This document shows, piece by piece, positions 20,278-24,585 of a stretch of DNA of 64,000 nucleotides. The position numbers were made by a program, and so were the translations under genes. Source of the DNA: Syncephalis fuscata S228 (taxonomy: Eukaryota > Fungi > Zoopagomycota); the NCBI GenBank assembly GCA_025786725.1, contig JAHLTZ010000009.1:496001-560000 (forward strand). Reading direction: 5' to 3'. Below the pieces are notes generated by a model that was not told where the DNA came from, did not search any database, and saw only the letters and a list, made by a program, of their open reading frames with translations. The stretch's first letter is position 1, and the number at the start of each line of letters is the position of its first letter.

Positions 20278-20651
20278 GATATGGAATCAAGCATATCGCT
20301 TCTATTAATATTCAATTAATCTTCTACACATAGCCAACAACGATCGGTCTTAAATGTTTCAAAAAATCAAATGATATGTTACACTATTTATTGAAAAGTT
20401 ATGGTTGCATTTTACTTTGCTCCACCTCTGTCCCCAAAGCACAATTTGTTTCAATCAGAGTCATGCCGTTATGATGTACAACATAGTTATATTACTTTTA
20501 TTAAAATACTATTAATAAATTGATTTAATTAAATAATGTAACATACCATTTGATTTCTCTGAAACATTTGAGATTGATTATTATTGTTGTTGGCTATGTG
20601 TAGAAAGATTGATCGAATATTAATAAAAGTCATTGATTGCGATTCCATGTC
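20278..20651. repeat. Imperfect inverted repeat (fold-back or MITE-like), ~120-bp arms and ~130-bp spacer
   Basis: ttctacacatagccaacaac...aaatgtttc...aaatcaaatgatatgttaca (20320-20383) is mirrored by tgtaacataccatttgattt...gaaacattt...gttgttggctatgtgtagaa (20537-20605). Confidence 0.8.
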
Positions 20652-21162
20652 GTTGCTCATTACTTTTGTTACCTGTTTGTCATACTGCACATCAAACTGT
20701 TATATGATTTATTTCTTTTCTATTTTGTTTCTGTTTACTTGAACCACATTTGCATATTATAATAATCATATTCAATGATTGCAATTATTTTATTCTTTTT
20801 ATACTTGTAGATCATTTCAACAAAAATATTTAAGAATTCAGTTTAAAAAGCCTTTTATTTTATTGAATGTTATTTCAACTTCAACTAATACCGTAATGTG
20901 CATATTTAATTAAATTATTGCATTGGTTCATTGAATATTATTAGTATTATATATTGTTGTATGTTGTCATTGGCACTTTTATTAATATAAGTATTTCTGA
21001 TAACTATAATAATGTATATAAATAGTTTATATTTAAATAATATTATTGTTTAGTTTCCAAATGCAAATGCTGTATTGCCAAATGGAGTCATTGGTTGTTG
21101 ATCTCTCATCATAGAAAATCTGAATCGAATTGTATACAGGTGAGACGAATCCGTTTCTCGGC

Positions 21163-21174
21163 ATATATAAATAA
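21163..21174 (+). promoter_or_regulatory. Probable TATA box of INO1
   Basis: atatataaataa immediately before a ~400-nt pyrimidine-rich, AUG-free leader. Confidence 0.45.
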
Positions 21175-21388
21175 CGACAATTTTCACTAACGTCGTCGCG
21201 CCTATTTCTTCTTCATCTACTTGCTTTCGACTCTTGCTTGCTTCTACTTGCTCATCTACTTGCTACTTGCGCACTTTCTGCCATCGTTCGAGTTCTTTAT
21301 TCCTCTCATTTGCTAGTTACCTTGCTTTATCAACCTTTGGTTGTTCTCATTAGTCCTTTAAGCCCGCGCGAGCCGGGCTTCTTTCAAA

Positions 21389-21469
21389 ACGTTCGCCAAT
21401 CTCCTTTCTTCGGTTCATAATCCGTACCGGGGCTATAAGAGACTTGGCGCAAAGACCAAGCCTAAATAG
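21389..21469 (+). promoter_or_regulatory. Candidate ACG-initiated uORF in INO1 leader (MFANLLSSVHNPYRGYKRLGAKTKPK*)
   Basis: TTCAAA-ACG is near-optimal fungal initiation context. 26 codons then TAG, 116 nt before the INO1 ATG. Confidence 0.6.
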
Positions 21470-21585
21470 TACCCGCTAGTGCTTTAGCTTTCTACTGATT
21501 GAATAGTTCATTCTCGTGTTTTTACTGTTGCTGCTACCTACTACTTACTACCACTACTCTCCTTTACTGATTTCCTTCTTTCGCT

Positions 21586-23239
21586 ATGCCTCCTATTAAT
21601 TCCTCTAACAATACCGATGGCCGGGCCACAGGCACTGACGCGCTCAAGTTCAAAGTGAACGCGCAGAACGTCGAATACAATGACGACCATATTCTGGCCA
21701 AGTATACCTACCAGAACACTGCTATCACTCAAGATGCCCATGGCAACGTTCAAGCAACGCCGACCAACACGATCTATCATTTCAAGACCGATGCTCGTCT
21801 ACCTAAAGTTGGGTAAGTTATAAGGAGCGATGTTTACTTTATTTGAATATATGCTAATCAGATCTTTGTTTATGTAATCTAGTTTAATGATGGTTGGTTG
21901 GGGCGGTAATAATGGCTCTACTTTAACGGCCAGTATTCTGGCCAATCGTCGTAACGTCCAATGGCGTACCAAGGAAGGTGTTCGTTCACCCAACTACTAC
22001 GGTTCATTGGTGCAAGCTTCTACGTTGAAATTGGGTGTTGACGCGGCGGGCAAGGACGTGTTTATTCCATTCCGTGACATTCTGCCCATGGTTCATCCTA
22101 ACGATCTTGTACTCGGTGGCTGGGATATTAACTCGGCAAACTTGGCCGAGGCAATGGAACGTGCCCAAGTGCTTGACTATGATTTACAGCGCCAATTACG
22201 TGATGAATTGTCAAGTTACACGCCACTGCCCTCCATCTATTATCCAGACTTTATCGCTGCCAATCAATCGGATCGTGCCAATAATGTACTTACTGGTACC
22301 AAGACTGAAAATTTGGCCCAAATTCGTGCTGATATCCGTACTTTCCGCGAAAAGAATGAACTTGATCGAGTGATTGTTATCTGGACGGCCAATACTGAAC
22401 GATTTGCCAGCATTTTGCCAGGTGTTAATGATACGGCTGATAATCTATTAAGTGCCGTTGAAGCTGGTCATGAGGAAATTGCACCATCTAGCATTTTCGC
22501 ATTAGCATCTATTCTTGAAGGTGTGCCATTTATCAATGGTAGTCCACAGAACACGTTTGTTCCAGGTGTCATTGAACTTGCTGAAAAGCATCGCGTCTAT
22601 ATTGGTGGCGATGACTTTAAGAGTGGCCAAACAAAGGTTAAATCGGTACTTGTTGACTTTTTGGTTAATGCTGGTATTAAGCCTATTGGCATTACTAGCT
22701 ACAATCACTTGGGTAACAACGACGGTAAGAACTTGTCAGCCCCGCAACAGTTCCGTTCAAAGGAGATTTCAAAATCGAACGTTGTTGACGATATGGTTGC
22801 TGCCAATCATCTACTCTATAAGAAGAATGAACATCCCGACCACGTGGTCGTTATCAAGTATGTGCCGTCTGTTGGCGACTCAAAGCGTGCACTTGATGAG
22901 TATGTTAGCGAGATCTTTATGGGTGGCCGCAATACCATCTCGCTTTATAATACGTGCGAAGACTCTTTACTAGCTTCGCCATTAATTATCGATCTTGTCG
23001 TAGTGACTGAGCTTATGACACGTATCCAGTACCGTACCGAGGATATGGAAAACTATGCACCATTTCACTCGGTGCTTTCCATTCTTTCCTACATGCTAAA
23101 GGCCCCTATGGTGCCCGATGGTACACCCGTCGTTAACGCGCTTAGTAAGCAGCGTACGGCAATGGAGAATGTATTCCGTGCTTGTGTTGGTTTACCACCA
23201 CAAAACGATATGCTTTTGGAGCATAAGGCCTTCCATTAG
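21586..23239 (+). CDS. INO1: myo-Inositol-1(3)-phosphate synthase
   Basis: Signature motifs [45 protein letters not shown]. Intron 21813-21882. Confidence 0.97.
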
Positions 23240-23612: not shown

Positions 23613-24585
23613 TTAATTTGCAGTGGCAATTTGCGACAAGTGAAGTATATGATTAGTTTTAGGACGATATCCGGAGTTATCATTATTTCTCATTTTTTGA
23701 CAGTGGCTAATCAATATCGTTGCAACAATCATCCTATAAATAAATTAGATATATGTATACAATTAATTGCTAATGCCTACCAGTCGATGGGAAAAAGTAC
23801 ATCAAGATTAGCATTGCCAATACGACTAACTATAATAATGCAGCAACCAAGATTTGTTAATAATGCCAGACATATTGTTTGTATTCCATCCCGTGCTAGT
23901 TGTTTCCATGCATCAGATCCAAATAGGCGATATTGATTTAAAGCAATACGGCAGAATATGATCGAGGAAAATACGTTGATGGGTGCATTTACTCCAATCC
24001 AATACCAAAGCAGAATGGGTGGATAGTACATAGCACAGCCGAGTTTAACTTTAAAGTAAAAAAGCAATAGTGTATCAAAATAAAAGCATAGCCTATTTGA
24101 GGCAATATAAAAATAATACCAATACAAGTAATCCACTTTTTTTGATAGAGAACCAAATGAACTTTTAAAAGAAGAATCGAGCTATTAAAAACCATTCCTA
24201 TAGAAGTAAAAAACCCGACACCATACTATCATTCTGCAATTAATGGCAAAACCTATCAACATGAATGTTTGCATTATACTAAGTATAGTGCCAGTAACAG
24301 CAAGCATTGAACAAAACCATGAGAGTAGTTTACGCGGTCGCGATATAATCATTTTGGTAGTTATAACAAATTGTGTGCAAAAATATAAAGCATTATAACA
24401 GAGGATATAAATTGGATTTGTATAACTACTAAACGAAGACGCTGCTCGTCAATATGACCTGTAGCTTCCACCAAAAAATCAGGCACGCTTATTTCACCAA
24501 GTGGATTGAGCGGAATACCCCATTGCTTTGTAGCATTATGTCTCCATTCAGTTTGTGTTGGATCGGTATAATTAATAAACGGCAT
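23613..24585 (-). pseudogene. Orphan 7-TM family subtype B, copy B2 (several frameshifts)
   Basis: MPFINYTDPTQTEWRH start. Homology continues across separate ORFs (24361, 23989, 23777). Same intron position; exon 2 ends SQIATAN-TAA. Confidence 0.7.

What the first reader, a model, noticed from the sequence alone, without database searches (positions are those of the whole stretch)
21360..21469. Hidden non-AUG (ACG) uORF plus hairpin in the INO1 leader: candidate inositol-sensing regulatory peptide
Seen: the ~400 nt between the TATA-like box (21163) and the INO1 ATG (21586) contain no ATG. At 21389 an ACG in TTCAAA-ACG context opens 26 codons (MFANLLSSVHNPYRGYKRLGAKTKPK-TAG). This stretch is more purine/GC-rich than the pyrimidine-rich flanks. 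A 7-bp GC-rich stem (aagcccg/cgggctt, 21360-21380) ends 8 nt upstream. The ORF track misses it. Established: metabolite-responsive uORF peptides control fungal biosynthetic genes, e.g. the arginine attenuator peptide of CPA1/arg-2. I recall reports of a near-cognate uORF in fungal INO1 leaders but cannot confirm homology. Inference: translational feedback control of inositol synthesis in an early-diverging fungus.
Basis: partly seen in the sequence, partly recalled or inferred. Interest (0 to 1): 0.85.

Follow-up and report, generated by a model that had tools for sequence, protein, structure and literature searches.

The report
Ancient non-AUG peptide uORF before INO1
The leader of the inositol-synthesis gene INO1 in this fungus carries a 26-codon upstream reading frame that starts at ACG instead of AUG, and its peptide has been kept almost unchanged across most major fungal groups, so it is very likely an old, apparently undescribed translational control device for inositol synthesis.

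Summary
The window is from Syncephalis fuscata, and the gene is INO1 (myo-inositol-1-phosphate synthase).

Within this one sequence none of these features exceeds chance. The comparative evidence is what makes the case.
- **Same peptide frame elsewhere.** It lies directly upstream of INO1 in every genome or contig I could fetch. These span Zoopagomycota, Mucoromycota, Chytridiomycota, Blastocladiomycota and Basidiomycota.
- **Selection on the peptide.** Synonymous sites are saturated (pS 0.84) against pN 0.34, and close pairs give omega 0.03-0.13.
- **Other coding signals.** Invariant Ser, Arg and Leu residues switch codon families. The length is fixed at 26-27 codons. Inferred introns at four positions keep the frame.
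- **Start codon.** Codon 1 is always AUG or a one-base variant of it: ACG, AUU, AUC, GUG or CUG, with AUG only once. An A sits at -3 in every non-AUG case.
- **Transcript.** RNA contigs begin at 21352 and run unspliced into INO1, so the hairpin and uORF are on the mRNA.
- **Hairpin.** A stem-loop 8-17 nt before the start recurs with different sequences in most lineages.

The best reading is a cis-acting nascent-peptide attenuator of INO1 translation. The ligand, presumably inositol, is inferred. I found no prior description in nine literature searches. Ascomycota could not be tested.

The parts
21164..21173 (+). TATA-like box of the INO1 promoter
   Evidence: The sequence is. A TATAAATA core aligns in the four Syncephalis-clade loci (A1). 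It lies about 185 nt upstream of the RNA 5' end, so it does not mark the transcript start.
21190..21351 (+). Pyrimidine-rich (CT) promoter block that is not present in the RNA contigs
   Evidence: Purine fraction is 0.29. RNA contig depth is zero upstream of 21352. The sequence does not align between species.
21352..21352 (+). 5' end of the INO1 mRNA contig (approximate transcription start)
   Evidence: Record 1 of run X1 spans 21352-21689 at word depth about 1844, and nothing lies upstream. Contigs give an approximate end only.
21360..21380 (+). Cap-proximal GC-rich stem-loop (7-bp stem, 7-nt loop) ending 8 nt before the uORF start
   Evidence: Searches give about -11.7 kcal/mol. In the Syncephalis clade the stem is invariant while the loop varies. 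Analogous hairpins with other sequences occur in Dimargaris, Conidiobolus, Lobosporangium, Gigaspora and Malassezia. Stouffer Z is -4.96 over 13 lineages. One Malassezia pair runs C-G, U.G, U-A.
21389..21391 (+). Near-cognate start codon ACG in the context caaaACGtt (A at -3)
   Evidence: Codon 1 is ACG, ATT, ATC, GTG, CTG or ATG in all lineages, and A is at -3 in all non-ATG cases. No other near-cognate codon lies in frame between the upstream stop (21359-21361) and the ACG.
21389..21469 (+). Conserved-peptide uORF: 26 sense codons plus TAG
   Evidence: Purifying selection and codon-family switches are shown. Homologues lie directly upstream of INO1 in 20 fetched loci of other species. It sits on the mature mRNA. 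RNAalifold finds no conserved RNA structure inside it.
21470..21585 (+). 116-nt non-conserved, ATG-free spacer between the uORF stop and the INO1 AUG
   Evidence: In other species the spacer ranges from 8 to 171 nt.
21586..21812 (+). INO1 exon 1
   Evidence: Together with exon 2 it gives the 527-aa protein P0001 (100% identity).
21813..21882 (+). INO1 intron (70 nt, GTAAGT..TAG)
   Evidence: An RNA contig of run X1 skips it. The boundaries were read.
21883..23239 (+). INO1 exon 2
   Evidence: It carries the Pfam domains NAD_binding_5 and Inos-1-P_synth.

Best explanation
The INO1 mRNA of Syncephalis fuscata starts at about 21352. It carries a small stem-loop (21360-21380) followed by a 26-codon upstream ORF (21389-21469). 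The uORF is initiated with Met-tRNAi at the weak start codon ACG, which sits in an optimal A(-3) context.

Shown here:
- The element is on the mature mRNA.
- Its peptide is under strong purifying selection across Chytridiomycota, Blastocladiomycota, Zoopagomycota, Mucoromycota and Basidiomycota. The motif is F-[AS]-N-[LQ]-L-x-S-x-H-N-[PQR]-[HYF]-R-G-x-[KR]-[RH], followed by a basic, Pro-containing tail.
- Wherever the context could be checked, the frame lies just upstream of INO1.
- The length is fixed at 26-27 codons.
- The start is almost always non-AUG.

Inferred by analogy with the fungal arginine attenuator peptide, the plant GGP ACG-uORF and the AZIN1/ODC uCC:
- Most scanning ribosomes leak past the ACG and translate INO1.
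- Those that initiate at the ACG make a nascent peptide that arrests its own ribosome inside the exit tunnel, probably at or near termination. Arrest happens when a metabolite is abundant. The most economical candidate is myo-inositol or a derivative.
- The stalled ribosome blocks scanning subunits and makes them queue. Queuing raises initiation at the weak ACG and may expose the mRNA to NMD. INO1 synthesis therefore falls.
- The conserved upstream hairpin probably tunes 43S loading or helps hold the preinitiation complex at the weak start. This is the least secure step.
For: **Organism and gene.** P0001 matches at 100% and is annotated as Syncephalis fuscata MIPS.

**mRNA.** The RNA contig 21352-21689 is continuous from upstream of the hairpin into exon 1. 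The downstream intron is skipped, which shows that run X1 is RNA.

**Conservation within the Syncephalis clade.** A block of about 110 nt is near-invariant in four Syncephalis-clade leaders, while the flanks do not align. Variable sites by codon position are 2/0/8.

**Homologous uORFs directly upstream of INO1 in other fungi:**
- Dimargaris, Lobosporangium and Conidiobolus.
- Gigaspora, Umbelopsis and Spizellomyces.
- Sorochytrium.
- Ten of ten metagenome pattern hits, including five Malassezia contigs.
- Serendipita indica.
- A motif-bearing ORF in Microbotryum.

**Selection.** Pooled pS is 0.84 against pN 0.34. For the core codons 2-15 the values are 0.88 and 0.24. Close pairs give omega 0.03-0.13. 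Ser TCN/AGY, Arg CGN/AGR and Leu CTN/TTR switch at invariant residues.

**Introns.** Inferred GT..AG introns at four different positions keep the frame and the downstream conserved residues.

**Start codon.** Codon 1 is only ever ACG, ATT, ATC, GTG, CTG or ATG, with A at -3 in the non-ATG cases.

**Not an RNA structure.** RNAalifold finds no conserved structure in the ORF, and Rfam has no match.

**Copy number and hairpin.** The element is single-copy in the genome. Hairpin recurrence and covariation are shown.
Against: - There are no ribosome footprints, toeprints or reporter data, so translation of the uORF and any stalling are inferred.
- The ligand is a guess from the function of the gene.
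- Contigs give only an approximate 5' end and cannot exclude minor longer or shorter isoforms.
- The hairpin is weak or absent in several lineages: Umbelopsis, Spizellomyces, Serendipita, one Mortierella-like contig and L020.
- Serendipita uses AUG, with the uORF stop only 8 nt before the main AUG. This fits a leaky-scanning model less easily.
- Splicing of the uORF in Umbelopsis, Spizellomyces, Sorochytrium and Conidiobolus is inferred from consensus sites, not from RNA.
- Ascomycota and non-fungal eukaryotes could not be examined.
- An Opi1 homologue exists in this genome, so transcriptional control of the yeast type may also operate.
Confidence: 0.72

Rival explanations
1. The uORF is translated and its peptide matters, but the signal it reads is not inositol. 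It could read start-codon stringency (eIF1/eIF5 balance), eIF2 ternary-complex level, polyamines through eIF5A acting on the Pro-containing tail, or another lipid or phosphate metabolite. Through that signal it would set INO1 output.
For: The non-AUG start with a conserved optimal context makes the element inherently sensitive to initiation stringency. Conserved Pro residues sit in the HN-P motif and in the K-P-K tail. Nothing in the data identifies the ligand.
Against: General stringency sensors do not need a peptide conserved over about 18 residues and a fixed length. The element is single-copy and exclusively linked to INO1 in every checked locus, which points to pathway-specific feedback.
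Confidence: 0.2
2. The uORF is a constitutive damper. It lowers INO1 translation, or targets the mRNA to NMD, by a fixed amount without sensing any signal.
For: Many uORFs act this way. In Cryptococcus neoformans INO1 mRNA rises in a upf1 mutant (bioRxiv 10.64898/2026.02.19.706931, read). Whether that species has this uORF was not checked.
Against: A constitutive damper needs no specific peptide. Here omega is 0.03-0.13 in close pairs, and six residues are invariant across the 14 representative lineages compared. The systematic avoidance of AUG and the fixed 26-27-codon length also argue for a tuned, peptide-dependent mechanism.
Confidence: 0.1
3. The peptide is a free-standing micropeptide that acts in trans, for example on the synthase or on a membrane target, and merely shares the INO1 transcript.
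For: There is strong peptide-level selection, and the basic C-terminal tail could bind acidic lipids or inositol phosphates.
Against: A weak non-AUG start is an odd choice for producing a functional protein. Position upstream of INO1 on the same mRNA was retained in all 20 fetched loci of other species across several phyla. No second copy exists in the genome. The fixed length resembles that of tunnel-acting arrest peptides.
Confidence: 0.04
4. The block is conserved as DNA or RNA only, for instance as a transcription-factor site, an RNA-protein binding site or a riboswitch-like structure. On this view the reading frame is incidental.
For: The nucleotide block is near-invariant within Syncephalis, and a structurally conserved hairpin adjoins it.
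Against: Substitutions fall at third codon positions (2/0/8). Synonymous sites are saturated between phyla while the peptide persists, and six-fold codon families switch at invariant residues. Introns interrupt the block at four different places yet preserve the frame. RNAalifold predicts no shared pairs in the ORF, and Rfam has no match.
Confidence: 0.02

Closest known systems
Plant GDP-L-galactose phosphorylase (GGP/VTC2) uORF, which gives ascorbate feedback (Laing et al. 2015, from my own knowledge; reviewed in PMC11066809, which appeared)
   Same: It is a conserved-peptide uORF that starts at a non-canonical ACG codon. It sits in the leader of the committed or controlling enzyme of a small-molecule biosynthetic pathway and is conserved over very long evolutionary distances.
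   Different: There is no sequence similarity, and the kingdom, pathway and gene all differ. The GGP uORF is about 60 codons long against 26-27 here. Ascorbate dependence has been shown experimentally for GGP, whereas nothing has been shown for INO1.
AZIN1/ODC 'upstream conserved coding region' (uCC), the polyamine-controlled non-AUG uORF with ribosome queuing (Ivanov et al. 2008 and 2018, from my own knowledge; PMC2811004 appeared)
   Same: It has a conserved near-cognate start in a good context and a conserved peptide. It offers a mechanism in which a paused elongating ribosome makes scanning subunits queue, which raises initiation at the weak start. It is found in fungi as well as animals.
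   Different: The uCC ends in a conserved Pro-Pro-Trp pause motif and is longer. The INO1 peptide has no PPW motif, and its best-conserved part is N-terminal and central. The pathway is different.
Fungal arginine attenuator peptide (AAP) of arg-2/CPA1
   Same: It is a short fungal uORF (24-25 codons) of fixed length. The conserved central residues act in the ribosome tunnel and stall the ribosome at the uORF stop codon in response to the pathway's end product. It is also linked to NMD.
   Different: AAP starts at AUG, in a poor context, and precedes carbamoyl-phosphate synthetase. There is no sequence relationship, and AAP is known mainly from Dikarya.
Yeast INO1 transcriptional circuit (Ino2/Ino4 activators, Opi1 repressor, UAS-INO)
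   Same: The target gene is the same, and so presumably is the physiological purpose, which is to shut off inositol synthesis when inositol is available. An Opi1-family gene is present in this genome.
   Different: That circuit acts on transcription through phosphatidic-acid sensing at the ER. The element here is in the mRNA leader and would act on translation.

Membership tests
Conserved-peptide uORF (CPuORF) | The ORF lies in the 5' leader of the mature mRNA, upstream of and separate from the main ORF | tested here: met
   The RNA contig 21352-21689 contains the hairpin, the uORF and INO1 exon 1 without a gap. The uORF ends in a stop 116 nt before the INO1 AUG.
Conserved-peptide uORF (CPuORF) | The amino-acid sequence is conserved between distant taxa under purifying selection | tested here: met
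   Pooled pS is 0.84 against pN 0.34. Omega is 0.03-0.13 in close pairs. Codon families switch at invariant Ser, Arg and Leu residues. The taxa span five phyla.
Conserved-peptide uORF (CPuORF) | The uORF is translated in vivo | not testable with these tools
   No ribosome-profiling data are reachable. Translation is inferred from the coding-type substitution pattern only.
Conserved-peptide uORF (CPuORF) | Repression of the main ORF depends on the peptide sequence | not testable with these tools
   This needs reporters or cell-free translation.
Non-AUG-initiated regulatory uORFs (GGP type, uCC type) | A near-cognate start codon is conserved in a favourable context, with no in-frame AUG available | tested here: met
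   Codon 1 is ACG, ATT, ATC, GTG or CTG in all lineages but one, which has ATG. A is at -3 in all non-ATG cases. The S. fuscata leader has no ATG at all.
Non-AUG-initiated regulatory uORFs (GGP type, uCC type) | Metabolite-dependent ribosome pausing on the uORF | not testable with these tools
   This needs toeprinting or ribosome profiling with and without inositol.
AZIN1/ODC uCC family | A C-terminal Pro-Pro-Trp pause motif, located upstream of an ODC or antizyme-inhibitor homologue | tested here: not met
   None of the 22 peptides compiled here contains PPW. The downstream gene is INO1 in the window and in all 20 fetched loci of other species.
Arginine attenuator peptide (AAP) | An AUG-initiated uORF upstream of the small subunit of arginine-specific carbamoyl-phosphate synthetase | tested here: not met
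   The downstream gene is myo-inositol-1-phosphate synthase and the start is non-AUG. Sequence similarity to AAP was not formally tested, because no AAP sequence was available from a tool.
Known structured RNA elements (Rfam families, riboswitch-like) | A match to a curated covariance model, or a conserved base-paired structure spanning the block | tested here: not met
   No Rfam hit appears at E<=1 in 21100-21700. RNAalifold finds 0 conserved pairs in the uORF. Only the separate upstream hairpin is structurally conserved.

The most novel reading that the evidence does not exclude
A pan-fungal nascent arrest peptide, conserved in every fungal phylum checked, makes the ribosome a direct sensor of myo-inositol or an inositol phosphate. 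It is coupled to a weak non-AUG start and a cap-proximal hairpin, which together convert stalling into queue-driven shut-off of INO1 translation. On this reading it is a second, ancient layer of inositol control that predates and parallels the textbook Opi1/Ino2/Ino4 transcriptional circuit, and a new small-molecule-responsive ribosome-arrest peptide class.
Probability: 0.35. Interest if true: 0.9.

Novelty: new member of a known kind. Interest (0 to 1): 0.75.

Why it matters
INO1 is the textbook example of transcriptional control of lipid metabolism in yeast. A translational attenuator conserved from chytrids to basidiomycetes would mean that the ancestral fungal control of inositol synthesis included an mRNA-level switch that annotation pipelines cannot see, because the start is non-AUG and the ORF has only 27 codons.

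It would add a new, deeply conserved family to the handful of metabolite-responsive nascent peptides (AAP, GGP uORF, uCC, MAGDIS, sucrose-control peptide). It would also give structural biologists a new candidate for small-molecule sensing in the ribosome tunnel.

The element is present in Malassezia, a human skin commensal and opportunist, and in mycorrhizal and Mucoromycota fungi, so it is relevant to how these organisms adjust to inositol supplied by a host.

It also exposes annotation errors. The hypothetical proteins BCR41DRAFT_355828 (Lobosporangium) and probably MVLG_05228 (Microbotryum) are ORFs that run into this uORF.

Tried and rejected
- **Single-sequence statistics** (ATG depletion, ORF length, hairpin energy, global fold) do not distinguish the element from shuffles.
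- **Rfam scan**: nothing found.
- **Second copy in the S. fuscata genome**: none found at the DNA level.
- **RNAalifold on the uORF**: no shared structure, so an RNA-structure reading of the ORF is rejected.
- **Literature**: nine full-text searches found no description of an INO1 uORF, and six papers were opened. The library lacks most subscription journals, so prior description cannot be excluded.
- **Earlier findings of this scan**: nothing on this element.
- **Profile search of the protein database with alignment A2**: it returned only the Lobosporangium ORF and one Microbotryum ORF. The genomic context of the Microbotryum ORF could not be checked because contig look-ups were exhausted.
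- **Ascomycota, Cryptococcus and non-fungal opisthokonts**: not examined, for the same reason. No ascomycete contig appeared among the 10 metagenome hits. This says little, because the pattern was strict and is broken by introns; even the Serendipita version fails it.
- It was rewritten with coordinates only.
- **Spliced uORF models** (Umbelopsis, Spizellomyces, Sorochytrium, two Conidiobolus-type loci): these were joined only inside scripts, from referenced coordinates, for translation and substitution counts.
- **Only one RNA run was available**, and only as contigs. Transcript ends are therefore approximate and nothing can be said about expression level.

Full report
**What is there.** The window comes from Syncephalis fuscata, a mycoparasite in Zoopagomycota. 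The 450-aa ORF at 21887-23239 is 100% identical to the annotated S. fuscata protein P0001, a 527-aa myo-inositol-1-phosphate synthase carrying NAD_binding_5 and Inos-1-P_synth domains. The gene has two exons, 21586-21812 and 21883-23239, separated by a 70-nt GTAAGT..TAG intron.

- ACG at 21389 sits in the context ttcaaaACGtt and opens 26 sense codons, closed by TAG at 21467-21469.
- A 7-bp GC-rich stem with a 7-nt loop lies at 21360-21380 and ends 8 nt before the ACG.
- No ATG occurs between 21083 and 21585.
- The patch 21360-21469 has GC 0.52 and purine 0.48, against GC 0.39-0.40 and purine 0.28 in the pyrimidine-rich flanks.

**Is it more than chance in this sequence alone?** No.
- In dinucleotide shuffles of the leader, 56% contain a closed ORF of at least 26 codons that starts at a near-cognate codon with a purine at -3.
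- A third of shuffles of the 234-nt leader lack ATG. Only over the 503-nt stretch is ATG absence unusual, at 0.8%.
- The hairpin window is matched by 7% of shuffles.
- The leader as a whole folds no better than shuffles, with z +0.64.

The case rests entirely on transcript and comparative evidence.

**Transcript evidence.** One public run (X1) holds the locus. One of its contigs skips the 70-nt intron, so the run is RNA. A 338-nt contig at word depth about 1844 runs from 21352 to 21689. It therefore begins 8 nt upstream of the hairpin, passes through the whole uORF and continues unspliced into INO1 exon 1. No contig covers 21104-21351.

The mRNA thus starts at or slightly upstream of 21352. 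The CT-rich block 21190-21351 is promoter sequence. Contigs give approximate ends only.

**Comparative evidence within the Syncephalis clade.** I aligned the INO1 upstream regions of S. plumigaleata (L001), S. pseudoplumigaleata (L002) and a relative from two JGI metagenomes whose INO1 is 85% identical to the query (L003, L004). The flanks do not align. A block of about 110 nt, from the hairpin to the uORF stop, is almost invariant, more so than the start of the INO1 coding sequence itself. Inside the frame, variable sites fall 2, 0 and 8 on codon positions 1, 2 and 3. An indel between the hairpin and the conserved tcaaaACG shows that the frame is not conserved upstream of the ACG.

**Comparative evidence across fungi.** A tblastn of the peptide against fetched INO1 loci finds the same frame directly upstream of INO1 in the following lineages.
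- Dimargaris cristalligena, ACG start.
- Lobosporangium transversale, ACG start.
- Conidiobolus coronatus and a close metagenomic relative, AUC start.
- Gigaspora margarita, GUG start.
- Umbelopsis ramanniana, ACG start.
- Spizellomyces punctatus, a chytrid, ACG start.
- Sorochytrium milnesiophthora, Blastocladiomycota, CUG start.
- Serendipita indica, Agaricomycotina, the only AUG start.

A degenerate 46-nt codon pattern was first validated on the loci already in hand. Scanned over JGI metagenome contigs, it gave 10 hits. All 10 are followed by an INO1 gene. Four are Mortierella-like with ACG, one is an unassigned lineage with ACG, and five have AUU starts. The INO1 of one AUU contig (L019) is 93% identical to that of Malassezia equina, and the other four have near-identical uORF peptides and similar INO1 genes, so I assign all five to Malassezia.

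A profile search also recovered a 75-aa 'hypothetical protein' of Microbotryum lychnidis-dioicae whose C-terminus carries the motif. Its genomic context could not be checked.

**Why this is a coding element.**
- *Substitution rates.* Over 14 representative lineages, Nei-Gojobori counts give pooled pS 0.84 (saturated) against pN 0.34. Codons 2-15 give 0.88 against 0.24. Close pairs have omega 0.03-0.13.
- *Codon-family switches.* Invariant residues are encoded by both families of six-fold codons. Ser8 uses TCN and AGY. Arg14 uses CGN and AGR. Leu6 uses CTN and TTR. This requires selection on the amino acid, not on the nucleotides.
- *Conserved residues.* N4, L6, S8, H10, N11 and R14 are invariant across these 14 lineages. 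F2 and G15 are nearly so.
- *Fixed length.* The frame is 26 or 27 sense codons in every lineage.
- *Introns.* Four lineages have consensus GT..AG introns inside the uORF, at four different positions. The intron follows codon 1 in Umbelopsis, lies within codon 2 in Spizellomyces, follows codon 13 in Sorochytrium and lies within codon 14 in Conidiobolus. In each case the inferred splice restores the frame and the conserved downstream residues. In Umbelopsis and Spizellomyces the upstream exon ends in the same tcaaaACG context as Syncephalis.
- *No RNA structure.* RNAalifold finds no shared base pair within the ORF, and Rfam has no match.

**The start codon.** Codon 1 encodes Thr, Ile, Val, Leu or Met depending on the lineage. 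It is nevertheless always AUG or a single-base variant of AUG. The chance of this over about six independent states is of order 1e-4. In every non-AUG case the -3 base is A, usually within AAA or ACC. In S. fuscata no other near-cognate codon lies in frame between the upstream stop (21359-21361) and the ACG.

This is the signature of an initiation site kept deliberately weak but well placed. The conserved non-AUG uORFs of plant GGP and of AZIN1/ODC show the same signature.

**The hairpin.** I folded the 45 nt upstream of the start in 17 loci. A stem-loop ending 8-17 nt before the start is seen in Syncephalis, Dimargaris, Conidiobolus, Lobosporangium, Gigaspora and Malassezia, built from unrelated sequences. 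Stouffer Z is -4.96 over 13 lineages treated as independent.

In the Syncephalis clade the stem is invariant while the loop varies. In Malassezia one stem pair runs C-G, U.G, U-A. The hairpin is weak or not evident in Umbelopsis, Spizellomyces, Sorochytrium, Serendipita, L020 and one Mortierella-like contig. It is therefore a frequent accessory rather than a universal part.

In S. fuscata it starts about 9 nt from the RNA 5' end. Its role is open. It may limit 43S loading, or it may refold behind the scanning complex at the mRNA exit when the P site reaches the weak start.

**Mechanism proposed.**
- *Shown:* a selected peptide-coding uORF with a weak start sits on the INO1 mRNA.
- *Inferred:* leaky scanning feeds the INO1 AUG. 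Ribosomes that start at the ACG synthesise a peptide that arrests them in response to a metabolite, and the fixed 26-27-residue length suits action within the exit tunnel at or near termination. The arrested ribosome blocks scanning subunits and makes them queue, which further raises initiation at the weak codon. NMD may contribute.
- *Ligand:* product feedback by inositol is the economical guess, but it is untested.
- *Difficulty:* the Serendipita variant has an AUG start and a stop only 8 nt before the main AUG. It would need reinitiation or a different balance.

**Comparison with known systems.** Functionally the closest are the ACG-initiated GGP uORF (ascorbate), the uCC of AZIN1/ODC (polyamines, ribosome queuing) and the fungal arginine attenuator peptide. 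It belongs to none of these families. The downstream gene differs, there is no PPW motif and the start is non-AUG, unlike AAP. It is a new family within the known class of conserved-peptide, non-AUG-initiated regulatory uORFs.

An Opi1-family gene exists in the S. fuscata genome. The translational device would therefore add to a transcriptional circuit of the yeast type rather than replace it.

**Novelty.** Nine full-text searches and six papers opened gave no description of an INO1 uORF. The only suggestive item is that INO1 mRNA rises in a Cryptococcus upf1 mutant (bioRxiv 10.64898/2026.02.19.706931). The library omits most subscription journals, so I cannot exclude prior work. I know of none.

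**Limits.** There are no ribosome-profiling data. One RNA run was available, and only as contigs. uORF splicing in four lineages is inferred. Spliced peptide models were joined only in scripts from referenced coordinates and were not sent to search tools.

**Verdict.** The interpretation as a conserved non-AUG regulatory peptide uORF is strongly supported and extends to most of the fungal kingdom. Inositol sensing remains a hypothesis.

Noticed in passing
L009:1999-2334 (Lobosporangium transversale) and protein P0242 (Microbotryum lychnidis-dioicae MVLG_05228): Two annotated 'hypothetical proteins', of 111 aa and 75 aa, appear to be gene-caller artefacts. Each is an upstream in-frame ATG read through into the INO1 uORF, and only the last 27-29 residues are conserved.
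   Followed up: partly
G000:C310:20099-21470 (minus strand): The S. fuscata genome encodes an Opi1-family protein (PF08618, 126 bits, in several exons). The repressor of the yeast INO1 circuit therefore has a homologue in this early-diverging fungus.
   Followed up: no
window 20568-20701: An RNA contig of run X1 (depth about 209) lies in the AT-rich gap upstream of INO1, with a 240-nt loose end beyond 20648. This is next to the fold-back element that another first-stage note places at 20278-20651. It may be an unannotated transcript or a repeat-derived RNA.
   Followed up: no
window 22571: The RNA contig reads G where the genome has A inside INO1 exon 2, at full depth. This could be a strain or allele difference, or RNA editing. 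The two cannot be told apart without DNA from the same isolate.
   Followed up: no
L001:3861 onward (S. plumigaleata): S. plumigaleata has an extra insertion of about 80 nt in the spacer between the uORF and INO1. It introduces an ATG and a short second uORF that the other Syncephalis leaders lack.
   Followed up: no
L001:6011-8049 and L002:3503-4649: A Peptidase_M49 (dipeptidyl-peptidase III) gene follows INO1 in both other Syncephalis genomes, so local synteny is conserved. In Conidiobolus-type loci the downstream neighbours are instead a Kre9/KNH-like gene and VPS18.
   Followed up: no
window 23867-24102: A low-depth RNA contig (about 44) lies downstream of INO1 and has one extra C after 24051 relative to the genome. 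It marks a weakly expressed neighbouring transcript, or an assembly or strain indel.
   Followed up: no
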